A stretch of 64,000 nucleotides of DNA from Mobula hypostoma (lineage: Eukaryota), in NCBI RefSeq assembly GCF_963921235.1, contig NC_086107.1, forward strand, positions 98,022,001 to 98,086,000, in the 5' to 3' direction. Under the pieces are notes generated by a model. That model did no database searches. It saw only the letters and a program-made list of their open reading frames with translations, and was not told where the DNA came from. How positions within the stretch are numbered: the stretch's first letter is position 1; each line of letters starts with the position of its first letter. Made by a program: the position numbers and the translations under genes. Below, in pieces: positions 274-39,959 of this stretch.

Positions 274-490
274 CAAACAACAGGAATTCTGCAGATGTTG
301 GAAATTCAAGCAACACACATCAAAGTTGCTGGTGAACGCAGCAGGCCAGGCAGCAGCTCTAGGAAGAGGTACAGTCGACGTTTCAGGCCGAGACCTGGCG
401 AAGGGTCTCGGCCTGAAATGTCGACTGTATCTCTTCCTAGAGATGCTGCCTGGCCTGCTGCGTTCACCAGGAACTTTGATGTGTGTTGCT
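274..490. mobile_element. Palindromic Penelope-tail mini-element
   Basis: Two inverted copies of the Penelope 3' end joined inside the hammerhead; TSD ctag(t)8-9a at 260-273 and 491-503. Confidence 0.88.
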
Positions 491-1687
491 CTAGTTTTTT
501 TTAAATTTTCAATTGCCTCTCCTTTACAGCTAGGTTTAACTGCACCCCTCTCATCCCTCATGAATTCCTTGTGAAATGAAGCACTGCTCTAGATTATTGT
601 CGCTCATCTCTTGCACTACCTCTACTAGGTGATGCTCTGTGGAGAGAGATGCAATGACGCAGTGTATTGCACTTGGCAGGATTCCAGTTGCTTGGGCCCA
701 TAGACGCTTCACTAGAAGACTCTGTTAATGAGTAATTCACCTCTGCCTCTGAAACAATCGCCTTTGTCTCCAGCTCTTGTGATTGTAATAGTAGTTAGGA
801 TAGTTAGGGAGAAACACATAAGTGCTAGAATCTGGAGCAACAGGCAATCTGCTGGAGGAACTCAGTGGAGCTTGACCCCTGCTGAGTTCCTCCAGCAGTT
901 TGTTTTTTCACTCTCTTGTTGTATGAATCTACCTATGTATTTATTATGGGCATGGGGGGCTAAATGTGGAAAGTAAATAATTTTCTTCAGATCAATGTTT
1001 ATTTACGCATGACACTGGACTTTGACATTATCTGGGTGTTAAAAACTCTTTCTGGTACTGATCCACATTCCTAGGTGTGCTGATCACCCTCTTGCCTTCA
1101 TGTGTTTCCACCAGGACTTCATATCTCTCTCCAGGTAATTCACGGGACACTTCCCTGGTTTTAGTGTTCTCTCTGTGCAGTATAGTCAAACACACACCAT
1201 TTGCTTCAGTGAGTTTGGCAATGTTGGAGCAGTTATTCTGGGGGCTGTGGCTCTTGCTGTAGGTGTTATATGTAGAAAGGTTAACACTGTTGCATTATGC
1301 CTGTTGCCATCTAAGGCAAGGTTTGCCATTTCAAACACAAAGTAAATGATTTTTAAATATTGGCAACTGTATATAATGAATGACACACCACAATTTCATC
1401 CAGAAACCGCAATCTCACACAATCGCTGGCATAATGTCTGCTACAATTTTCTCTTCCAGAACCCAAGGGAATAGTTATATTTTAGGTTCCTTACTTTCTC
1501 TAATACTTACTGTGTAGACATATTAGTAACCCTAAATCCCTCCCTGAACTCAATGTGTACTTCATTTACTAAGACCTCATTGATTAGAGGTTGAACTGAA
1601 GGTGTTTCTTTCACCAAAGGAATGGTAAAGGGTTGGAACTCACAAACCAAAAGGTTGTAGAGGTGAAGCTGCTTCCATTTTAAAAGT

Positions 1688-1839
1688 AACACACATAAAA
1701 GTTGCTGGTGAATGCAGCAGGCCAGGCAGCATCTCTAGGAAGAGGTGCAGTTGACGTTTCAGGCCGAGACCCTTCGTCAGTCCCCAGCAACTTTTATGTG
1801 TGTTACTTGAATTTCCAGCATCTGCACAATTCCTGTTGG
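1688..1839. mobile_element. Palindromic Penelope-tail mini-element
   Basis: Inverted tails; exact 15-bp TSD ttccattttaaaagt at 1673-1687 and 1840-1854. Confidence 0.9.
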
Positions 1840-2148
1840 TTCCATTTTAAAAGTGACTGGATGAATCCCTACAATATCATGATACACATGTTCATTTCCT
1901 AAGAGCTGGGCAGTGAGATTAGTCTACATCGCTTTTTATTGACTAGTGTGGACACCATGACCTTCACAATTTCTATGCTGGAAATTTCTATGGTTTCCTA
2001 AAAGATGATTTACTATGTGAATGCATGTATGAATAATTGTGGGAAGTAGACACAAGATCAACAAAAAAGCATTGCTATACATTATGTTAACCAATATCAC
2101 TATGCTCAGAATCATCTCATACTTAGTAATGTGTAAATATTTTCTTAC

Positions 2149-11964: not shown

Positions 11965-12192
11965 AAGAAAGAGAAAATCTGCAGATACTGGAATTCCAAG
12001 CAACACACACAAAATGATGGAGGAACTCAGCAGATTAGGCAGCATCTATGGAAAAGAGTAAACAGTCAGTGTTTCGGGCCAAGACCCTTCTTCATGATTT
12101 ATGAAGGGTCTCGGCCTGAAATGTTTACTGTTTACTCTTTTCCATAGATGCCACCTACCTGCTGGGTTCCTCCAGCAATTGTGTGTGTGCTG
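11965..12192. mobile_element. Palindromic Penelope-tail mini-element (second subfamily) nested in an older one
   Basis: Exact 14-bp TSD caggcagtagttat at 11951-11964 and 12193-12206; outer inverted tails at ~11900-11950 and ~12207-12240. Confidence 0.85.
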
Positions 12193-12687
12193 CAGGCAGT
12201 AGTTATTCTGGTTTTATTGCAGATTTCCAGCATCTACAATTTTACCTGGACAATATGACTCTGAGGCAACAGTGAACAGGAGTCAAGGGATTTGCTCTGA
12301 GACTTCTGATCCCCATGTTATAAAATAAATAACTGGATAGGCATCATACTTCTGGGAAAATAAAATAGTAAAATGATCTGATGTGACCCTTGGTATTATG
12401 ACTATTGAAATATGGAAAAGATATTCTACTTATAGAAGATAATCACTAATACCTCCAACTAAGAAGATAGAATGTCGAGATGAAACATTCAAATACATTT
12501 AAAAGGATCAACATGAAGGAGAAAGAAATAGAATTCAATGAGGAAGTGTGGAAGGAAGCTCCACCCTTCCTCATTGAGAAATATTGGTATAGTATGAAGT
12601 AGTTAGGGCCATTTTTGGTCAAAAGGCATTTGAGTTTTCTTCTCTAATAATTGGGGTGTAACAGGGACAGTATGTTTGGATTCTTAC

Positions 12688-12834
12688 AATGAGTTTGTTG
12701 GCTGCTTCCTTGATTTTATCAACCTTAGCTTCAGAAAGGCCCTTAATGTTGCACAGCGCCCTTCGTGTTGTCATCTGAATTCCTTTCACTGTACAGATTC
12801 CAACTGTTTTCATTTTCTTAATGTCAGCAACATT
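12688..12834 (-). CDS. DMC1: DMC1 coding exon (147 nt, HhH domain)
   Basis: NVADIKKMKTVGICTVKGIQMTTRRALCNIKGLSEAKVDKIKEAANKLI; cag| and |gtaag. Confidence 0.97.
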
Positions 12835-14529
12835 CTGTAAGCAAACAGCAAAAAAAAAGCCCAATCATTAAGTGCAGAAACAAAGAATTATTTTGTTTAA
12901 AATATGCACATCAAATAAAGGTAAAGGATTAGGTCCATTAATGTTTTGGTTTCATGGGCTTTCATTAAAATGGAACTGAAGTGAAACTCTTCAGCCTGAA
13001 ATAGTTCTTTCTGTCTGCATCAGAACTGGACATTTCTGCTTTTCAATTTTTCTTATTCTATTCATATAATCTAGCTTATGGGTATGTCCCACATTCTCAG
13101 TAATAACACATTACGAAACAAAGTATGCTTATATCTGCTAAGCTAATTAATAACATTAAACTATTTGGACTAACCATATCATAGTTATATTTGCATTCTT
13201 CTTCCCACCATGGATCTTACTGAATACTAAATTTTTTTATACCCACTTCTGACAAAGCACCCTAAACCATTAACTGCTTCTCTCTCCACAGAAGCTCCCT
13301 GACCTTATAAATGTTTCTAGCATTTTCTGTTTTTAATTCAGATTTCCAGCGTTTATCTTAACTCTAAGATATAACTGATATATTCTACCTGATTTTAGGT
13401 AGAATACCACTTACAGGATTTGCTCACACTAGATCTCAAGAGTGGTATGTCAAAGATATCAGACATGCTGGAAATAAAAGAATTGAAAAATAAAACCTAG
13501 TCTTGATAATGGGATCATTGTTATCATAATAGAGAAATAAATTTACTGATCTTTCATGTCTGCCACTTAGATAAGCCCTTAGTGATATAGTTCGGAAAAC
13601 TTCTAAATAGTCATATTCTGAAAAGTTATTCAGTTGAGGTAGCAAAACACTTCAGATGTGTATCATAAACCATGATTATGACATGAACAGCACTTCAAAA
13701 TGAAGCAACAATTAATTTGAACATTACACAGTTTAGAGTATTGCATTCAATGCTCACAATGCAGATTCTTCTATATTAGAGAAAGCAAATGCAAATTGAG
13801 TGACTATCTGTGTAAAGCACCGTTGCAGGCGTGATCCTGAGCTTCCAACTGGCACTTTAATAATCCATCATACTCTTACTCTGACCTAATGGGAGATTCC
13901 CACACCATCCCAGTGAAGCTTAAAATAAGCTTGAGGAACAGAACCGCATTTTCCATGTGGGGGAGCCTTTGGAATTCAATATCAAATTCATCAATTTCAG
14001 CAGATTTGTTTTCTCTGTATCAGAATGGTCAATCCTTCTACAATATCTTTGTATCATTTTAATTAATTTCTCTCCATTGGCATAGCCCTACGTGCTGTGC
14101 ATTTTCTACATCTCTCACGTGTTTCACAGTCTTTACATGTCCTTTTATTTGATTTTTTTCCTATTTACCCTCACTAAAAAATCTAACAGATGGCTTCATC
14201 ACCAGCTTGTCACAACAAACCTAGCCTCAACCATAAGGTTATTCCTTCTGTCCTATCCATCTCTCCCTGCCGTTTCTGTAACTTAAAAGAAACTTGTTTT
14301 CTTTCATAGTTGTGATGAAGGGTCTTCAACCTGAAACTTTTCTCCTTCCATAGATGCCAACTGCCCAACTGAATATTTTCTGTTTTGCTTCAGGTTTGCA
14401 TCTTCTGCAGTTATTTTACTTTCATAAACTATGACTCAATGTATAGACAAATCCACTAACAAATTTATTTGCAACCAAAAGTGAAGATCTAAGATTAAAG
14501 CTTAGATAGTCACAGTTTACAGTACTTAC

Positions 14530-14574
14530 AATGCCATGTTTCTGTAAGAGATCGATGTCCTGGAAGAAGGACTC
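14530..14574 (-). CDS. DMC1: DMC1 coding exon (45 nt)
   Basis: ESFFQDIDLLQKHGI; cttcag| and |gtaagt splice sites. Confidence 0.96.
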
Positions 14575-15510
14575 CTGAAGGAACAAAAATAAAGTCACAT
14601 TAGTTCATACTTTTCATCAAATTATACCAAGATATTACTCTAGGCCATAAGATATAGGGGTAGAAGTAGGCCATTTGGCCCATCGAGAAAGGGTCTTTAA
14701 TGGTTACCTCAAACTTAGTGCCCATATATGTGGTGTATGACCATGACTCTACCAATCAAGCAGGAGATAAACAGGACAAAGACCTGAAAGAGCTGGTCTG
14801 CATTAGAATTAGCTGTATTGTAAGGCTGTAGTCATCTGGGAATCAAGGGGGATAAATTACCTGGGGAAAACAGGACATCAGCAAATCAATAGGTGAGAAT
14901 GTTTGAGATAGGAGTTGGCAAATTGAGGGACTGCAATAATCAGCAAGGGTTTGGGTTGGCAGGTCTGGGGGTCTGAGCAATGGCCAAGGCTTGAGTGCAG
15001 GGATCAATAAATCATTGAAATGAGTCCTCTTGGATTATCAATGCTAACTATGATGCCAAGGGAGTTACCAGAGCAATGTTGAGTCATGATATGGAGACAG
15101 TTGATAGTAATATAAAAATAGTTCAGTTTGAAATTATGAATGGTAGGGGAGAGAAAACACAGGTGGGTGTAGTCTATCGACCCCCAAAATGTGACATCTC
15201 AAAAGGACACAAATATAAATGGCAAAATATCTAGGCATCTTTAAAGGGAACTGCATTCATCATGGGAAATTTTAATCTACATATTAATTGGATGAACCCA
15301 ATTGGAAAGAGTATCACAGAAGAAGAATTTGTGGAGGACGACAGACTTTGCTTCTTAGTACAATAGGTATTGAACCTACCGGAACAGGTTATTTTGGATT
15401 TGGCCATGAGTAATAAGGAAGGATTAATAAGAGGTCTTATGGCTAAATATCCCCAATATGATAGGATCCCAGATACATTTTGAGTATGAACATTATAGGA
15501 AGAAAACAAC

Positions 15511-17193
15511 ACACATCAAAGTTGCTGGTGAACGCAGCAGGCCAAGCAGCATCTGTAGGAAGATGTGCAGTCGACGTTTCAGGCCGAGACCCTTCGTCAG
15601 GACTAACTGAAGGAAGAGTGAGTAAGGGATTTGAAAGTAGGAGGGGGAGGGGGAGATCCAAAATGATAGGAGAAGACAGGAGGGGGAGGGATAGAGCCAA
15701 GAGCTGGACAGGTGATAGGCAAAAGGGGATACGAGAGGATCATGGGACAGGAGGTCCGGGAAGAAAGACAAGGGGGGGGGACCCAGAGGATGGGCAAGAG
15801 GTATATTCAGAGGGACAGAGGGAGAAAAAGGAGAGTGAGAGAAAGAATGTGTGCATAAAAATGAGTAACAGATGGGGTATGAGGGGGAGGTGGGGCCTTA
15901 GCGGAAGTTAGAGAAGTTGATGTTCATGCCATCAGGTTGGAGGCTACCCAGACGGAATATAAGGTGTTGTTCCTCCAACCTGAGTGTGGCTTCATCTTTA
16001 CAGTAGAGGAGGCCGTGGATAGACATGTCAGAATGGGAATGGGATGTGGAATTAAAATGTGTGGCCACTGGGAGATCCTGCTTTCTCTGGCGGACAGAGC
16101 GTAGATGTTCAGCAAAGCGGTCTCCCAGTCTGCGTCGGGTCTCACCAATATATAAAAGGCCACATCGGGAGCACTGGATGCAGTATATCACCCCAGTCGA
16201 CTCACAGGTGAAGTGTTGCCTCACCTGGAAGGACTGTTTGGGGCCCTGAATGGTGGTAAGGGAGGAAGTGTAAGGGCATGTGTAGCACTTGTTCCGCTTA
16301 CACGTATAAGTTCCAGGAGGGAGATCAGTGGGGAGGGATGGGGGGGATGAATGGACAAGGGAGTTGTGTAGGGAGCGATCCCTGCGGAATGCAGAGAGAG
16401 GCGGGGAGGGAAAGATGTGCTTAGTGGTGGGATCCCGTTGGAGGTGGCGGAAGTTACGGAGAATAATATGTTGGACCCGGAGGCTGGTGGGGTGGTAGGT
16501 GAGGACCAGGGGAACCCTATTCCTAGTGGGGTGGCGGGAGGATGGAGTGAGAGCAGATGTACGTGAAATGGGGGAGATGCGTTTAAGAGCAAAGTTGATA
16601 GTGGAGGAAGGGAAGCCCCTTTCTTTAAAAAAGGAAGACATCTCCCTCGTCCTAGAATGAAAAGCCTCATCCTGAGAGCAGATGCGGCGGAGACGGAGGA
16701 ATTGCGAGAAGGGGATGGCGTTTTTGCAAGAGACAGGATGAGAAGAGGAATAGTCCAGATAGCTGTGAGAGTCAGTAGGCTTATAGTAGACATCAGTGGA
16801 TAAGCTGGCTCCAGAGACAGAGACAGAAAGATCTAGAAAGGGGAGGGAGGTGTCGGAAATGGACCAGGTAAACTTGAGGGCAGGGTGAAAGTTAGAGGCA
16901 AAGTTAATAAAGTCAACGAGTTCTGCATGCGTGCAGGAAGCAGCGCCAATGCAGTCGTCGATGTAGCAAAGGAAAAGTGGAGGATAGATACCAGAATAGG
17001 CACGGAACATAGATTGTTCCACAAACCCAACAAAAAGGCAGGCATAGCAAGGACCCATACGGGTGCCCATAGCTACACCTTTAGTTTGGAGGAAGTGGGA
17101 GGAGCCAAAGGAGAAATTATTAAGAGTAAGGACTAATTCCGCTAGACGGAGCAGAGTGGTGGTAGAAGGGAACTGATTAGGTCTGGAATCCAA
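15511..17193 (-). mobile_element. Penelope-like retroelement, 5'-truncated, left arm of palindrome
   Basis: ORF 15898-17217 has RT motifs (GVAMG, YIDD, LPFLD) followed by GIY-YIG endonuclease (VIYCIQC..C...YIGET.R.L..RF.EH); the 3' UTR carries a hammerhead. Confidence 0.95.
15568..15609 (-). ncRNA. Minimal type I hammerhead ribozyme (intact core)
   Basis: Minus strand reads agtc-CTGACGA-agggtctcggcct-GAAAC-GTC-gact. Stem I is agtc/gact, stem II is agg/cct, stem III is the palindromic ACGT; cleavage triplet GUC. Confidence 0.85.
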
Positions 17194-17204
17194 GTATATA
17201 AGTA

Positions 17205-18960
17205 TATATACTTCCATCCTCCATCAGGAAGGTCTCAAAGCTCTACGCTTCTTTTTGGATTCCAGATCTAATCAGTTACCCTCTACCACCGGAATTAGTC
17301 CTTACTCTTAATAATTTCTCCTTTGGCTCCTCCCACTTCCTCCAAACTAAAGGTGTAGCTATGGGCACCCGTATGGGTCCTAGCTATGCCTGCCTTTTTG
17401 TTGGCTTTGTGGAACAATCTATGTTCCGTGCCTATTCTGGTATCTGTCCCCCACTTTTCCTTTGCTACATCGACGACTGCATTGGCGCTGCTTCCTGCAT
17501 GCATGCAGAACTCGTTGACTTTATTAACTTTGCCTCCAACTTTCACCCTGCCCTCAAGTTTACCTGGTCCATTTCCGACACCTCCCTCCCCTTTCTAGAT
17601 CTTTCTGTCTCTGTCTCTGGAGACAGCTTATCCACTGATGTCTACTATAAGCCTACTGACTCTCACAGCTATCTGGACTATTCCTCTTCTCACCCTGTCT
17701 CTTGCAAAAACGCCATCCCCTTCTCGCAATTCCTCCGTCTCCGCCGCATCTGCTCTCAGGATGAGGCTTTTCATTCTAGGACAAGGGAGATGTCTTCTTT
17801 TTTTAAAGAAAGGGGCTTCCCTTCCTCCACTATCAACTCTGCTCTTAAACGCATCTCCCCCATTTCACGTACATCTGCTCTCACTCCATCCTCCTGCCAC
17901 CCCACTAGGAATAGGGTTCCCCTTGTCCTCACCTACCACCCCACCAGCCTCCGGGTCCAACATATTATTCTCCGTAACTTCCGCCACCTCCAACGGGATC
18001 CCACCACTAAGCACATCTTTCCCTCCCCGCCTCTCTCTGCATTCTGCAGGGATCGCTCCCTACACAACTCCCTTGTCCATTCGTCCCCCGCATCCCTCCC
18101 CACTGATCTCCCTCCTGGCACTTATCCGTGTAAGTGGAACAAGTGCTACACATGCCCTTACACTTCCTCCCTTACCACCATTCAGGGCCCCAAACAGTCC
18201 TTCCAGGTGAGGCAACACTTCACCTGTGAGTCGACTGGGGTGATATACTGCGTCCAGTCTCCCGATGTGGCCTTTTATATATTGGCGAGACCCGACGCAG
18301 ACTGGGAGACCGCTTTGCTGAACATCTACGCTCTGTCCTCCAGAGAAAGCAGGATCTCCCAGTGGCCACACATTTTAATTCCACATCCCATTCCCATTCT
18401 GACATGTCTATCCACGGCCTCCTCTACTGTAAAGATGAAGCCACACTCAGGTTGGAGGAACAACACCTTATATTCCGTCTGGGTAGCCTCCAACCTGATG
18501 GCATGAACATCAACTTCTCTAACTTCCGCTAAGGCCCCACCTCCCCCTCGTACCCCATCTGTTACTCATTTTTATGCACACATTCTTTCTCTCACTCTCC
18601 TTTTTCTCCCTCTGTCCCTCTGAATATACCTCTTGCCCATCCTCTGGGTCCCCCCCCCTTGTCTTTCTTCCCGGACCTCCTGTCCCATGATCCTCTCGTA
18701 TCCCCTTTTGCCTATCACCTGTCCAGCTCTTGGCTCTATCCCTCCCCCTCCTGTCTTCTCCTATCATTTTGGATCTCCCCCTCCCCCTCCTACTTTCAAA
18801 TCCCTTACTCACTCTTCCTTCAGTTAGTCCTGACGAAGGGTCTCGGCCTGAAACGTCAACTGCACCTCTTCCTACCGATGCTGCTTGGCCTGCTGCGTTC
18901 ACCAGCAACTTTAATGTGTGTTGCTTGAATTTCCAGCATCTGCAGAATTCCTGTTGTTTG
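17205..18960 (+). mobile_element. Penelope-like retroelement, 5'-truncated, right arm of palindrome
   Basis: Near-identical inverted copy of the left arm, with a 17-bp deletion at 17290, a frameshift near 18257 and an extra ~36 nt 3' tail. The whole palindrome is flanked by TSD aggaagaaaacaac (15497-15510, 18961-18974). Confidence 0.95.
18821..18862 (+). ncRNA. Minimal hammerhead ribozyme (stem I mismatch)
   Basis: cagttagtcCTGACGAagggtctcggcctGAAACGTCaactg; a G>A change follows the cleavage triplet. Confidence 0.75.
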
Positions 18961-21900
18961 AGGAAGAAAACAACTGTCTTCAACTTCAAAAAGAGCAAAT
19001 ATAATGCTGTAAAGGTGGAGTTATCTAAGATGATTTAGCAAATAAACTAAGAGACAAATCAATGGAGAAATAGTGCCTGATACCTAAACAGAATACTCAG
19101 CAGGAATTTATCCCAATTAGAAAGAGGGATTCCACAAGAAAGATGAACAATCTGTAATTACCAAAGGAGGTAAAGGATAACACTTAATTGAAAAATAAGG
19201 CATACAAAATGCTAAAGGCTGGTGGTGGGTCTGAGGACTGGGAATTTTCTAGGGCTCAGCAGTGAAAGACTAAAAAACTTATAAAGAAGATGATTGATTT
19301 TAAAATAAAATTTAAATGTAATATCAAGACAAACAGTAAGAATTTCTGTGGATATATAAAAATGAAGAAAGTGGCTAAGGTAGATATGAGACCACTAGAA
19401 AATGAGGTTAGTGAATCAATAATAGAAACAAAGATATGGCAGATATATGTATTATATGAGTTTGTTTCCTCAGGCTTCATAGAGCAATAGAACAATACAG
19501 GATGGAAACAGGCTCTTCAACCCAACATGTCCACGCCAACCACGGTGCCCACCAAGCTAGTCCCACTTGCCCATGCTTGCCAGTGTTCCTCTAAATCACT
19601 CCTAACCATCTGCTTAACTGAATGTCATTTAACTGTTGTTATTTTACCTACTTCAACCACTTCCTCTGGCAGCTCATTCCCTCTGAGTGAAAAAGATCCC
19701 CCCCAAGATCCCTTTCAAATTTTAATCTCTGACCTAAAACCTAAGCTTTCCATTTCTAACAAAAAAGACTATGCCCATTCACCCTTTTTATACACCTCAT
19801 GATTTTATACAACTCTATCGGATCAGCCCTCAATCTCATATGCTCCAGGGAATAAAGTTCTAGCCTGCCCAACTTCTCCATAACTCAGGCCCTTGAGTCC
19901 TGGCAGGAAGCATTCTCATAAAACTCATAAATCATTTCTGTGCTCTTTCTGGTTTAATGATGTGTTCCCTTTAGCAGGAAGACCAAAACTGTACACAATA
20001 TTCCAAATGCAATCTCACCAATGTCTTATACAATTGCATTATAACATGCTAACTCCTATACTCAATGTCTTGACTTATGAAGGACAGTGAGCCAAATAGC
20101 TTCTTCACAATCTGGTCTATCTGTCATGCCACATTCAGCAAACTTTGTACTTGTATCTCTAGGTCTCACTGTTCCACAACACATACAGGACCTGACCAAT
20201 GACTATATAAGTCGTTGGGAACCAATCGACTGCACCCTTGGGATCTATTGGTTGAAAATTTTCAAAACTACCTAAATTCTGAGAGGCTACTAGAGGTCTG
20301 GAAAACATTAATTGTAATCCACTTATTTTAAAAAAATGGCAGAAAGACAAGGACTGTGAAACTATAGGCCAGTTAGTTTAATATCTATTGTTGGCAAAAT
20401 ACTAGAATCAATGATCAAAGAGGAAATAACTAATCATTTACAAAAGCTGAATATATTCAAACTTGGCCAACATAGTGTTATGAAAGGTAAATAATGTTTA
20501 ATATATTTGCTTCAATTTAGGTTGATAGAGGGAACTATTAGATATAGGATATTTAGATTTCTCAAAGGCCTTTGACAAGGTAAAACATAAGAAGCTGGTG
20601 CATAAATTAAGAGCAAAATGTATTGAAGGAAGCGTGTTAACATAGATTGAGCAAAAACCTGACAAACGGAATTTTGTGTGGGGAAGACTGAGGTCATGCA
20701 TTTCAGTAAGAGGAAAGGGTCATCTAATTATCTAATTGAAGAGAGGCTGGAAATGAGTGAAATTTGTTGTCATAATGCATGGATCATAAAAGCTAGCAGC
20801 CAAGTCCAGCAAGTAGCTAAGAAGGAAAATGGCATGTTGGCCTTTATTGCAAAGGGATTGGAGTTAATGATTAGGGAGATTTTGTCACAGTTGTACAGGG
20901 TTTTGGTGAGGCCCAATCTAGAATACTGTGCAGTTTTGGTCCCCTTAACTAAAAAGGATAATAAAAACACTGGAGACAGTTCAAAGGAGGTTCACCAGGC
21001 TAATCCTTGAGATGAGGGTGTTGTCCTATCAAGGGAGACGAAACAGTTTGAGTCTGCATTCCTTGGAATTTAGAAGAGTGACGTAAAAGATTGTAATTTG
21101 TTTGGTAGGGTAGATGATCAAATGTTTTCACCAATGGAAGAGTTATGGCCAAGAGCATATAGCTGCAAAATAAGAGGGCATTTAATTAAAACTGAGGAGC
21201 ATAGACAGTAGTGAATTTATGAAATTCTCCCAGAAGGTGGTGGAGGCCAGATTATTATATATATTTAATTTGGGGAAAAGAGAAATGTTTGAAAGATTGA
21301 GGAGTTGAAGGCTAATGAGAACTGCTACAAACAGAGTTGAGGCCCGTATAAACCAGCCATGATCACACTGATCGGTGGGGCAGACTTGAGGTGCCAGCTG
21401 GTCTGCTCCTGCTCCTATTTTCATCAGTTTTTCTTTAAATTTCAGTTTCTTATATATCCCTATGGTTTTCATTTCTTCACTTAACCCTTGATATACCTTG
21501 AATCCAGGATTCCTTGGAGATGTCCTTACTTTTCACCGCTATGGGAATATGTTCATTCCTGTCCAAAGATGCTGCCTGATATGCTCAGTTCCTTCAGAAT
21601 TTTGTGAATGTGGCTCTATTTTAGTTTCCTCACAGTTATTAGATATAAATGGCAGTCCCAGTCCTTTGTTTTTTGGTGCTGAAATTGGCCTTCACCATTT
21701 TAGGACCTTAATTTTTGATTCACCTTTGCATCTTTATGGATATAGTCACTATCTCCAAAAGACTCTCCCACTAAACACTGTAACCACTTACCTTGCAATA
21801 TTCCCTTAAACCAAATCCAATATGTCCCCTGCTCTTGTTGGATTATCTATGTACTTACTGGGTGCAGTTTAAAAATTCTAATAGTCTTCCACACCAAGGT

Positions 21901-23879: not shown

Positions 23880-23936
23880 CTCTTCATCCTGGAAACCAAC
23901 TTCCTCTTCCACTACCTGATCCTCCATGGCTTTCAT
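23880..23936 (-). CDS. DMC1: DMC1 first coding exon (coding part; exon extends to acceptor at 23983)
   Basis: Translates MKAMEDQVVEEEVGFQDEE, matching the vertebrate DMC1 N-terminus (human MKEDQVVAEEPGFQDEE). Donor GAG|gtatag; pyrimidine-rich acceptor ...ttctag at 23984. Confidence 0.93.
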
Positions 23937-36850: not shown

Positions 36851-39797
36851 ACTAGTTGACTGTTACAATGGTAAACTGGTGTGATTCTGTAATGCCAACT
36901 GTTTTAAAAACTCTTATTAGCTCATACTAATGAGACCTAGGTCACTTGCTGTCACTATTTCATAGCACCGGCCAAACAGTGGCAGTCATCTGCCCAACCA
37001 CCACAGATAGGAAAAATGCACACAGCTAGAATTAGTTTCAGTCTGCAGTAAAACAGATTTGAAACTGGCTTTCTTGCCTGTAAAATAGTTTCAACAACTT
37101 GGGCAAGTTTATTTGGATAATTACACACCACTACCACCAAAACCCATTTCTCAGTTTTAAATATTGAGAAGTGTATCACAACCTTTTCAATGCATTTGAA
37201 GCTTTATTTCTCAGCAGTGCAAACAATAAAACATCAGTAAATTAAGAGAAAAAAATTAAAAAAATAACTTTCAAAACTCTTTGAGTGGTGTAGAAAATGT
37301 TTGCATTGATCAAGTAGTTACATCACGCTGGAACTGAGTTTATAATACATACAAGGTGTATTTGATTTTTTTATTGTAAACAATAAGCAGAATGAAAAAA
37401 ATACTGTTAGTTTTGCATTTCATTTGAAAGCTTTAAAGTAAAATATTGTATATATTATCAGGAATCAAAGCATTATTTTATCACATTACATTAAATGCAC
37501 GTTGCAATAAAATCAAACAATATTATTAGGCATATTGGGAGAGAAATGCAATGTTTAGCTCCTCTATCGTGATTTTAATATTCATTTTGGCTAAAACCTA
37601 CTGCATTGCACAGCATGGATGACTCTTGCTTCTTCAACTATAGCATTTTTTAAAAAAGCAGACCAATTTTAAGAAATAAATCTTTTGATGTCCCCATTTC
37701 TATAGATGGTAGCCCTATCAATAAATTAATACTTCAATACAATAATTATTTAACATTAGCTGGCAATAGTTTAATTTCATTTTGCTGGTTCTTTTTGAAT
37801 CATTGTGACAAATCCTTTAATAAATCTTAAAGGTGCCTGTGAGCAGTGCAATAGCATAGTAGTGCAAATATTGCCTCATGATACATATAGCAGATACAGT
37901 TAATACTGCTGGTCTTTAAGCTAGACTACTTGGCGACTAACATTGTTCTTATGACATTTTCCATTATATTATAACCACAGGAAATAAATAGTATGGGGAA
38001 GGAGAACAAAATTAGAAAATTCCAATCTTAATCTTACTGATGCTAGTGGAAAATACAAGATTATACAATGAAATCAACATGGCAGCAATGTACAAGTGTG
38101 AGGAATTTTCCATCTCTGCTCTCAGCCTCTTCCCCCCCCCCGATGCTTTCTGACAATTGCTGCTTTAAAACAAACCACAAATCAAATGGAATAAATTTAA
38201 GAAATAAATCCTGACTTTAAGAATCATTTCCAGATAGCTATAGTACAATATGGGATGCACATGAATGCAACCTTCAATGAGCATACACCAAACTCTCAAA
38301 TTCTTGTTCAGTTCATTACTTCCATTTTTCACACTGGCCATTGGAAACTTCTTGGTTAGGCTGCCAATCAGTACACCAGTCGACAATTTATTTTCAAGAA
38401 TGCATGGCAGGATTCCAGTCCAAATGTCGTGTTCAAAATAGTCCATGATGCTGAAAGATAACATCCTAAACTACTTTAAGTTTCATTCCGATGGCTAGTG
38501 AGCGCTTGGCAACAATTTAATTTTAATAATTTGGAAGAATCTTGTGTACCATAGAGTAAATAAATTTAAAATGTTTTGCAATTAATGGTGCAGTTGAACT
38601 GCATTTCTCTAAAAGCTCAGAGAAACAGCAGAGTAAATTGTGTCTAGCAACAGGCAAAATTGTTGACCATTTCTGATCATGGGTAAAGCACTAAATGTGT
38701 GGGCAGAGGATAAGGCCTCACCCTCAATCAGTGTCTCTTTGATACTGGGACATTACTGTCACATGATTGTTGAGGAAGGTAAATAGACAATCATGCAAAG
38801 GCCTAGGTAGACCCTCAGGTAGGGTACCTTAAAGCAGGTGCTGCTATAGGAAAGTAAACCAGAAACACCATTTCAATGTGGACCTTCAGATGATGATGAT
38901 GGTGGCATGTTAGATTTACACTGGATGTCTGTTGAATGGGAATGTTATTGCAGAAAGTACCTACTTTTGCATTTACCCTTCCTCAAAGCTCTGTGTTTGT
39001 GTTCTAAATGGACTTTCCTTAAATAGACATTTCTACTTCACAATTTGGCCTGTTCTCCCTGTTCCATGAGTTTATGAAGCATTTCCCATCCATGAACAAA
39101 ATCATTTTGACAAACACAAATCAGAACAGTGATGCAAAAGGATCAAAAGAATAAATTGCATCAAGCTCCTAATGTATTTTTAGCCAGATTTCTTTCTTCA
39201 ATTGACTTAGGTTAAGTGGCTGCTGTCCCATAGTTAAAAATTTGAGGAGATGTATAATTTCATTCTGAACCATATAACTGTGTAGCAATGGATACTAAGC
39301 TGGAAGGCCTTGTAGCAGATGCATGTTGAAAGCAGTTATGCAAGTGATTTCATGATCTTGTATAAGAGCAATTAAGCTTTGTAGTCAGCATGGCAGCTGG
39401 TGTTTGAACTGACTCAGGTCTTTAAGCATTTTTAAAATATATCATGTGCTACTGGCATGCAATTCTATAAATCACTGCCCGATTTGTGAAGAAAAAAATC
39501 AAATTAAGTTAGATGACATTTGTTTGTCTGGTACACTAGCACTTCCACTGGTAATTCCATTTACTGGCAGGGAAGTTAAATGCATACTGGGTGAACAGAA
39601 CAACATTCAATTAGATTTAAACTTGCAGTCATTAATAGACTACATACACCAAACTGACTTAAGTTACGGAAACCTGTAGCTCTTAATATTTGTTACAAAT
39701 CATACAAATGTGCATACAAATTAGGCACAGGACAGGCCACTGCACCTCTCAAACCTCCTCCACAATTTAACAAGAACATGGCTTATCTAATAGTAAC

Positions 39798-39959
39798 ATA
39801 CATCAAAGTTGCTGGTGAACGCAGCAGGCCAAGCAGCATCTATAGGAAGAGGCGCAGTCGACGTTTCAGGCCGATAGATGCTGCTTGGCCTGCTGCGTTC
39901 ACCAGCAACTTTGATGTATGTTGCTTGAATTTACAGCATCTGCAGAATTCCTGTTGTTT
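39798..39959. mobile_element. Palindromic Penelope-tail mini-element
   Basis: Inverted tails; exact 15-bp TSD ttatctaatagtaac at 39783-39797 and 39960-39974. Confidence 0.9.

What the first reader, a model, noticed from the sequence alone, without database searches (positions are those of the whole stretch)
15497..18974. 3.45 kb near-perfect palindrome inside DMC1 intron 2
Seen: two ~1.7 kb head-to-head Penelope arms with a tiny spacer, bounded by one 14-bp TSD, so they came from a single insertion event into an old CR1. The arms differ by scattered substitutions (many at CpG), a 17-bp deletion and a 1-bp indel, which argues it is real and datable like paired LTRs. Inference: the DMC1 pre-mRNA would form a ~1.7 kb dsRNA stem in meiotic cells (ADAR substrate, endo-siRNA source against the whole Penelope family), and the DNA could extrude a cruciform or fragile site.
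Basis: partly seen in the sequence, partly recalled or inferred. Interest (0 to 1): 0.8.

Follow-up and report, generated by a model that had tools for sequence, protein, structure and literature searches.

The report
Palindromic Penelope-like insertion in DMC1 intron
A real 3.45-kb hairpin-shaped insertion of a Penelope-like jumping gene sits in an intron of the meiotic gene DMC1, but its shape is the usual product of how these elements integrate, a sister species lacks it, and no effect on the host is shown.

Summary
Two 5'-truncated copies of one Penelope-like element (PLE) lie head-to-head at 15511-17193 (- strand) and 17205-18960 (+ strand). They are joined by an 11-nt filler and flanked by a 14-bp target-site duplication. 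The arms differ at 30 of 1665 paired sites (1.8%; 10 are CpG transitions), plus a 17-bp and a 1-bp indel. A DNA contig from a related organism joins 15496 directly to 18961. That is the empty site with one copy of the target, so this was one lineage-specific insertion. One arm carries a 37-41-nt "tail" and the other does not. Four smaller inverted dimers in the same window show the same asymmetry and 13-15-bp duplications. This matches the published PLE signature (inverted 5'-truncated copies, tail at one end) and the in vitro finding that a PLE protein cleaves and extends both target strands from two start sites. The host gene is DMC1 on the minus strand, and the insertion is in the intron after the first coding exon. 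The RNA is predicted to form a roughly 1.65-kb stem, but no DMC1-expressing RNA run of this organism was available. Editing and small RNAs are therefore untested. Cruciform extrusion is unlikely with a 61-nt unpaired centre. The scan has already noted similar PLE palindromes elsewhere in this genome. Verdict: an ordinary new member of a known kind.

The parts
15497..15510 (.). Left copy of the 14-bp target-site duplication AGGAAGAAAACAAC. The last 4 bases, CAAC, are ambiguous between target and element end.
   Evidence: The empty site in organism B has a single copy (record 18).
15511..17193 (-). Left arm: a 5'-truncated PLE copy, sense to DMC1, with a tail-less 3' end at the outer edge. It keeps an open 439-codon frame (15898-17217) covering the RT C-terminal part, a CX4CxxC linker and GIY-YIG.
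   Evidence: Other copies run on past 17193 (loose ends).
17141..17157 (.). 17 bp present in the left arm only. It is deleted in the right arm, where it breaks the frame, and it makes a bulge 37 bp from the inner end of the stem.
17194..17204 (.). 11-nt filler GTATATAAGTA at the 5'-5' junction. It is built from reverse-complement copies of the first bases of the right arm (TATATACTT) and creates the mini-palindrome AAGTATATATACTT.
   Evidence: and loose ends at 17193 and 17205
17205..18960 (+). Right arm: a 5'-truncated PLE copy, antisense to DMC1. It reaches 50 nt further 5' than the left arm (17205-17254, unpaired). It is frameshifted by the 17-bp deletion and by a 1-bp deletion opposite 16172.
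18924..18960 (+). The 'tail': a 37-41-nt 3' extension present on this arm only. The same extension ends other copies at 274, 1841, 30054 and 39959.
   Evidence: At 18960, 37 contigs run on into unlike flanks.
18961..18974 (.). Right copy of the target-site duplication
15568..15609 (-). Hammerhead-like core (CUGACGA ... GAAAC GUCGAC) near the element's 3' end. Its mirror copy is at about 18821-18862 (+), with GUCAAC.
   Evidence: sequences. No Rfam hammerhead match at gathering score or at E up to 10. The fold is no better than shuffles. Motif only, activity untested.
23880..23936 (-). DMC1 first coding exon (MKAMEDQVVEEEVGFQDEE), followed by a GT donor
14530..14574 (-). Next DMC1 exon (ESFFQDIDLLQKHGI), with an AG acceptor and a GTAAGT donor, 936 nt downstream of the palindrome in the transcript
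12688..12834 (-). DMC1 exon matching human DMC1 residues 33-81
   Evidence: E 3e-24 against DMC1, 1e-7 against RAD51
274..490 (.). Short inverted dimer of the same family: tailed arm on -, tail-less arm on +, 13-bp duplication
1684..1841 (.). Short inverted dimer: tail-less arm on -, tailed arm on +, 15-bp duplication
39792..39959 (.). Short inverted dimer: tail-less arm on -, tailed arm on +, 15-bp duplication
11969..12193 (.). Inverted dimer of a related PLE family: tailed arm on -, tail-less arm on +, 14-bp duplication

Best explanation
This is one retrotransposition event of an abundant, recently active Penelope-like element. The element's GIY-YIG nuclease cut both strands of the target about 14 bp apart. 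Each freed 3' end primed reverse transcription of element RNA. One started at the outer start site and so kept the 37-41-nt tail. The other started at the inner start site and so has no tail. Both cDNAs stopped early inside the RT gene. Their ends were then joined through a short filler copied by fold-back. The result is a head-to-head dimer with 3' ends outward, framed by a 14-bp duplication. It landed in the DMC1 intron after the first coding exon, in the lineage of organism A after (or around) its split from organism B, and has since decayed. Shown: the anatomy, the single event, the empty site and the recurrence of the architecture. Inferred: the both-strand priming mechanism, by analogy with the anole element studied in vitro. 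For the host it is most likely a neutral intronic passenger. The pre-mRNA is predicted to fold it into a roughly 1.65-kb imperfect duplex, which would be an ordinary intronic dsRNA removed with the intron.
For: The arms and their differences are shown. The arm ORF has a GIY-YIG match (22.2 bits) with two cysteines between VIY and YIGET. Its nearest Atlas clusters carry RVT_1 plus GIY-YIG (score 0.97). The empty site in organism B is one contig covering 14655-15496 and 18961-19124. The left arm ends exactly at the tail-less terminus, and the right arm at the tailed terminus, that independent copies in the window share. Five of five inverted dimers in the window pair a tailed with a tail-less arm and have 13-15-bp duplications. 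Craig et al. 2021 describe inverted 5'-truncated copies and a 30-40-bp tail at one end as typical of PLEs. Frangieh et al. 2024 show that the anole element cleaves and extends both strands, and that the tail is the stretch between two RT start sites. Summed depth on the arms is 0.5-2.7 million against about 15 on the flanks, and 40% of laid contigs are at least 99% alike, so the family is large and young. The RNA minimum free energy is -3586 kcal/mol against about -1170 for shuffles, with 1648 arm-to-arm pairs.
Against: Both-strand priming has been shown only in vitro, for a different PLE in a different host. No read shown to me spans the centre, so extra sequence between the arms or an assembly error there is not formally excluded. 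Five of five asymmetric dimers is a small sample (chance about 0.03 if the ends were chosen independently at 50:50). Precise loss of the insertion in organism B, rather than gain in A, is not excluded without an outgroup.
Confidence: 0.85

Rival explanations
1. Functional hairpin locus. In meiotic cells the DMC1 pre-mRNA folds the two arms into long dsRNA. That dsRNA is edited by ADAR and/or diced into small RNAs that act on the whole PLE family, or it alters DMC1 processing.
For: A very stable stem is predicted, with perfect runs of up to 307 bp. The family is abundant and similar enough to be targeted. In Drosophila melanogaster strains transformed with Penelope, siRNAs map precisely to rearranged copies with long inverted repeats (PMC3681739).
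Against: There are no RNA data. RNA-labelled runs of organism A hold no DMC1 exon words and give zero depth on the unique intron flanks. The letter variants on the arms are also present in DNA runs, so they are family variants and not editing. The sister taxon lacks the insertion, so it is not needed for DMC1 function. The locus is not special either: five such dimers lie in this window alone, and the scan holds many more notes on them. From general knowledge, long-dsRNA dicing is weak in most vertebrate cells.
Confidence: 0.1
2. A DNA-level origin. Either a single truncated PLE insertion was later copied in inverted orientation by replication fold-back or template switching, or two independent insertions landed next to each other.
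For: Palindromes can arise by fold-back replication. PLE nucleases are reported to recognise PLE sequence, which could favour nested hits.
Against: The left arm stops exactly at the element's canonical tail-less terminus, seen in at least 5 independent copies. A DNA duplication has no reason to respect that terminus. There is only one duplication, and it frames the whole unit with no target-derived bases at the inner junction. Organism B shows a clean empty site and no one-arm intermediate. The same architecture recurs with arm lengths from 60 to 1700 nt.
Confidence: 0.04
3. An assembly artefact, such as a chimeric fold-back read or a collapsed or misjoined repeat.
For: PLE inverted structures are known to trouble assemblies (Craig et al. 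2021). No contig shown spans the centre.
Against: Artefactual fold-backs give identical arms. These arms differ at 30 sites and two indels, have unequal inner and outer ends, and have a matching duplication confirmed by the empty site in organism B. An organism A contig crosses the left junction without any difference or branch.
Confidence: 0.02

Closest known systems
[quoted passage not shown] 2021, PMC8557442)
   Same: It has an inverted 5'-truncated copy adjacent to another copy, forming inverted repeats. It has a 30-40-bp tail at one end only, a hammerhead-like motif near the terminus, a GIY-YIG nuclease with cysteines between GIY and YIG, and a target duplication of variable length.
   Different: Here both copies are truncated, so there is no full-length unit and no direct pseudo-LTR. 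It is a bare two-arm dimer. The CX4CxxC linker points to a Neptune-type PLE rather than Penelope/Poseidon proper. That rests on the motif only, and no tree was built.
PAc (Poseidon of Anolis carolinensis) in vitro integration (Frangieh et al. 2024, PMC11167929)
   Same: Cleavage and extension of both target strands, plus two internal RT start sites whose spacing equals the tail, would give exactly a dimer with one tailed and one tail-less arm inside one duplication.
   Different: That work used purified protein on short substrates. It did not report a rule that the two strands use different start sites, and I did not read it as seeing a difference between strands. The in vivo product here is a natural case in a ray genome.
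L1 twin priming (Ostertag and Kazazian 2001; cited from my own knowledge)
   Same: A second priming event on the opposite target strand creates an inverted segment within one duplication.
   Different: Twin priming copies one RNA at two places. It therefore yields an inversion of the 5' part without duplicating sequence. Here both arms hold the same 3' part of the element, so two full priming events at 3' start sites are needed.
Hairpin-RNA or inverted-repeat small-RNA sources, such as Penelope inverted copies giving siRNAs in transformed D. melanogaster (PMC3681739)
   Same: Long inverted PLE repeats lie inside a transcribed unit, and the predicted duplex is long.
   Different: No small-RNA or editing data exist for this locus. 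The host is a vertebrate, and the setting is intronic.

Membership tests
Penelope-like elements (EN+ PLE) | C-terminal GIY-YIG nuclease fused downstream of the reverse transcriptase in one ORF | tested here: met
   The 439-aa frame 15898-17217(-) ends in a GIY-YIG match (E 1.8e-4, 22.2 bits against a cut-off of 22.6). The nearest Atlas clusters carry RVT_1, HTH_animal and GIY-YIG (score 0.97, 198 shared features). The RT N-terminal half is missing through truncation.
Penelope-like elements (EN+ PLE) | CCHH-type motif with two cysteines between GIY and YIG (Arkhipova 2006, as quoted in PMC8557442) | tested here: met
   The sequence reads VIY-C-IQ-C-SRCGLL-YIGET ... AEH ... H. The definition was read.
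Penelope-like elements (EN+ PLE) | Insertion signature: 5' truncation, inverted or tandem partial copies, and a 30-40-bp tail at one end | tested here: met
   with definitions.
Penelope-like elements (EN+ PLE) | Hammerhead ribozyme motif in the terminal repeat region | tested here: inconclusive
   The core letters CUGACGA...GAAAC, with a palindromic ACGU/GUCGAC, are present. Rfam hammerhead models gave no match and the fold is not better than shuffles. Minimal PLE hammerheads are expected to escape such models. Activity was not tested.
   CKRNKCYTC (CX4CxxC) is present upstream of GIY-YIG. This linker is described for Neptune, Naiad and Terminon nucleases and as absent in Penelope/Poseidon. 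No phylogeny was run, so the clade call is provisional.
DMC1 (host gene) | Closer to DMC1 than to RAD51 in sequence | tested here: met
   Exon 12688-12834(-) matches human DMC1 residues 33-81 at E 3e-24 and 45 of 49 identical, against E 1e-7 for RAD51. Further exons were found by motif.
   Open frames on the + strand at 15076-15234 (...VGVVYRPP...), 19290-19490 and 20678-21010 (...LYRVLVRPNLEYC...) look like LINE endonuclease, linker and RT C-terminal pieces by eye. Pfam found nothing and the Atlas gave only a weak RVT_1 lead. The clade was not determined.

The most novel reading that the evidence does not exclude
The DMC1-hosted hairpin, and the many PLE dimers like it inside transcribed introns, could act as a built-in hairpin-RNA source. 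On this reading, meiotic transcription of DMC1 yields long dsRNA that is processed into small RNAs against a PLE family that is still active and very abundant. A separate, more sober novelty is that PLE dimers may obligatorily pair one tailed with one tail-less arm. That would reveal a fixed division of labour between the two subunits of the integration complex.
Probability: 0.08. Interest if true: 0.6.

Novelty: new member of a known kind. Interest (0 to 1): 0.25.

Why it matters
As a single locus it matters little. It is a lineage-specific, decaying intronic insertion whose shape is the textbook by-product of PLE integration. Its use is as a clean natural specimen, because the exact empty site survives in a sister taxon and both element termini, the filler and the duplication can be read base by base. 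Together with four smaller dimers in the same window, it gives in vivo support for the both-strand, two-start-site integration model that so far rests on one in vitro study. It also hints at a testable rule of one tailed and one tail-less arm. The presence/absence difference between two closely related rays offers a natural control for asking whether such intronic hairpins produce edited RNA or small RNAs.

Tried and rejected
- **Rfam:** Searches at gathering score over the whole window, and at E up to 10 over 15300-19150, gave no hammerhead. The only hits were chance hairpin matches to miRNA models caused by the palindrome centre.
- **Pfam on the right-arm ORF and five flank ORFs:** nothing usable.
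- **PDB sequence search with the arm ORF:** no match.
- **Search for RNA runs that express DMC1 in this organism:** the holders of exon words are other species, and organism A's RNA-labelled run holds none. The dsRNA, ADAR and siRNA test therefore could not be run.
- **A-to-G differences on the arms:** I looked for them as a sign of editing. All listed variants are also present in DNA runs of three organisms, so they are family polymorphisms.
- **Organism B's 0.69 share of words:** this first suggested the palindrome was present there. Laying the contigs showed the arms' words come from other copies and that the locus is empty.
- **Snap-back of one cDNA:** rejected, because the arms have different 3' termini and the flanking repeat is direct, not inverted.
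- **Words-based look-up of earlier notes for palindromes:** returned nothing. The genome-scope look-up did return notes.
Full report
**Observation**

The inverted repeat is real. The repeat finder reports arms 15504-16171/18259-18926 (99% complementary) and 16173-17141/17290-18258 (98%). My alignment pairs 1665 sites with 30 substitutions, or 1.80%. Of these, 19 are transitions, 11 are transversions, and 10 are CpG-type transitions. A 17-bp stretch (17141-17157) and one base (16172) are present only in the left arm. The 14-bp repeat AGGAAGAAAACAAC sits at 15497-15510 and 18961-18974. GC content and the skews flip sign at the centre, as expected for two inverted copies.

**What the arms are**

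The left arm carries, on the minus strand, an open 439-codon frame (15898-17217). It ends with a GIY-YIG domain. Two cysteines lie between VIY and YIGET, and a CKRNKCYTC linker lies upstream.

- Its nearest ESM Atlas clusters combine RVT_1, HTH_animal and GIY-YIG.
- This is the architecture of endonuclease-bearing Penelope-like elements (PLEs), whose nucleases are set apart by cysteines between GIY and YIG (PMC8557442).
- The same paper says the CX2-5CxxC linker is absent from Penelope/Poseidon proper. By motif the element therefore looks Neptune-type, so 'Penelope' is right at the class level only.
- Both arms lack the N-terminal half of the RT. Their 5' ends meet at the centre and their 3' ends point outward.
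- The right arm is frameshifted by the two deletions.

**Fine anatomy**

A blastn of the right arm against the window, together with loose ends of genomic contigs, shows three things.

- The left arm stops at 17193 and the right arm starts at 17205. Other copies of the family run on past both points.
- The 11 bases between them (GTATATAAGTA) are reverse-complement copies of the first bases of the right arm. This is a typical template-switch or end-joining filler.
- The right arm has 50 nt of element that the left arm lacks, so the unpaired centre is 61 nt.

At the outer ends, the right arm runs 37-41 nt further (to 18960) than the left.

**One event, lineage-specific**

I laid Logan contigs of four runs on 14300-19900.

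- In organism B, one 1006-nt contig at single-copy depth covers 14655-15496 and continues directly at 18961-19124. This is the empty site with one copy of the 14-bp target.
- In organism A, a contig crosses the left junction (14645-15529) with no difference and no branch, at the same depth as the flanks. The sampled animal therefore appears homozygous for the insertion.
- Organism B's high share of words (0.69) comes from other copies of the family, not from this locus.
- Flank divergence between A and B is about 30 differences in about 1900-1950 bases, or 1.5%.
- Arm-to-arm divergence is 1.8%, or 1.2% without CpG transitions.

If the arms were identical at birth, the insertion dates to about the time of the A/B split, or just after it. 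Where other copies in the window allow the changes to be polarised, both arms carry private derived changes. That fits decay after insertion. Three caveats apply: two separate cDNAs need not have been identical, arm-to-arm gene conversion could erase differences, and precise loss in B is not excluded without an outgroup.

**It is the usual product of this element class**

The window holds four more inverted dimers: 274-490, 1684-1841 and 39792-39959 from the same family, and 11969-12193 from a related family. Their arms are 60-140 nt long. All five dimers have 13-15-bp duplications, and all five pair one tailed with one tail-less arm. Single copies end at one or the other of the same two termini.

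Craig et al. 2021 list these as general PLE traits: strong 5' truncation, an adjacent inverted 5'-truncated copy, and a 30-40-bp tail often present at only one end. Frangieh et al. 2024 showed for the anole element that the protein cleaves and extends both target strands. They also showed that reverse transcription starts at two internal sites whose interval is the tail, and that the protein is predicted to be a dimer.

The simplest reading of the present structure has four steps:

1. A staggered double cut about 14 bp apart.
2. Two target-primed cDNAs started at the two different start sites.
3. Premature stops in both cDNAs.
4. A filler-mediated join of their ends.

Snap-back of one cDNA, later DNA-level duplication, and two independent insertions all fail. 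They do not explain the different canonical termini, the single direct duplication, or the clean empty site. An assembly artefact would not give unequal, diverged arms. Earlier notes of this scan on the same genome, a devil ray according to one of them, describe further PLE fold-back and palindromic insertions.

**Host gene**

DMC1 lies on the minus strand.

- The exon at 12688-12834 matches human DMC1 residues 33-81 (E 3e-24, against 1e-7 for RAD51).
- The first coding exon is 23936-23880.
- The next exon is 14574-14530, with consensus splice sites.
- The palindrome lies in the 9.3-kb intron between these two exons, 936 nt upstream of the acceptor.

Calling it intron 2 assumes an untranslated exon 1, which I could not verify. 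The left arm is sense and the right arm antisense to the pre-mRNA. The flanks carry decayed LINE-like frames on the plus strand, recognised by eye only. Pfam is silent and the clade is unresolved.

**Consequences**

*RNA.* The pre-mRNA strand of 15397-19074 folds at -3586 kcal/mol, against about -1170 for shuffles. It forms 1648 arm-to-arm pairs, and perfect runs reach 307 bp. A long intronic duplex is therefore a sound prediction. Nothing beyond that could be tested:

- The RNA-labelled runs of organism A hold no DMC1 exon words.
- They give no depth on the unique intron flanks.
- The variant letters on the arms also occur in DNA runs.

The siRNA idea has a direct insect precedent. In D. melanogaster transformed with Penelope, siRNAs map to rearranged copies with long inverted repeats (PMC3681739). 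It is not a new idea, and here it is unproven. The sister taxon does without the insertion, and the locus is one of a great many such dimers.

*DNA.* In yeast, widening an inverted-repeat spacer from 12 to 20 bp cuts recombination about 40-fold, and widening it to 100 bp cuts it about 300-fold. Even one mismatch near the centre has an effect (PMC10164571). This locus has a 61-nt centre, a 17-nt bulge 37 bp in, and three mismatches in the innermost 30 bp. Cruciform extrusion from duplex DNA is therefore unlikely. Hairpin formation in long single-stranded DNA remains possible.

**Verdict**

The functional half is untested, and the cruciform part is unlikely. The locus is a well-preserved new example of a known kind of insertion. 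The modest points of interest are the validated empty site and the five-of-five asymmetry of tailed and tail-less arms.

Noticed in passing
window 274-490, 1684-1841, 11969-12193, 15504-18960, 39792-39959: All five PLE inverted dimers in the window pair one tailed with one tail-less arm and have 13-15-bp duplications. If the ends were chosen independently at 50:50, the chance of this is about 0.03. This may reflect a fixed asymmetry of the integration complex.
   Followed up: partly
window 15597-15618 joined to 18814-18833 (joints): Very many genomic contigs of organisms A and B join the two arms at these places. Short fold-back dimers whose arms break just 5' of the hammerhead-like core are therefore extremely common genome-wide. 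The in-window short copies also start at the equivalent of 18826-18843.
   Followed up: no
window 15898-17217 (-): The nuclease linker carries CKRNKCYTC (CX4CxxC). The literature says this is absent from Penelope/Poseidon and present in Neptune-type PLEs, so the family may be Neptune-like rather than Penelope proper.
   Followed up: partly
window 15507-15510, 1684-1688, 39792-39797: At the tail-less ends, 2-5 bases are shared between the target duplication and the element terminus (…GTTG/GTTAC). This suggests microhomology between the nicked target and the inner start site. The tailed ends show no such overlap.
   Followed up: no
window 15076-15234, 19290-19490, 20678-21010 (+): There are decayed LINE-like coding remnants on either side of the insertion, antisense to DMC1 and at single-copy depth. 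This is an old element, and its clade was not determined.
   Followed up: partly
window 15422-18974 (depth table): Summed contig depth on the arms falls from about 2.7 million at the 3' ends to about 0.5 million at the centre, against about 15 on the flanks. 40% of contigs are at least 99% alike. This indicates a huge, recently active family with the usual 5'-truncation gradient. Small runs labelled RNA by guess also hold it.
   Followed up: no
window 14487-14860 and 19536-19722: Two flank stretches show raised depth (hundreds to thousands) in both organisms, so other repeats border the unique flanks. The first stretch overlaps the small DMC1 exon at 14530-14574.
   Followed up: no
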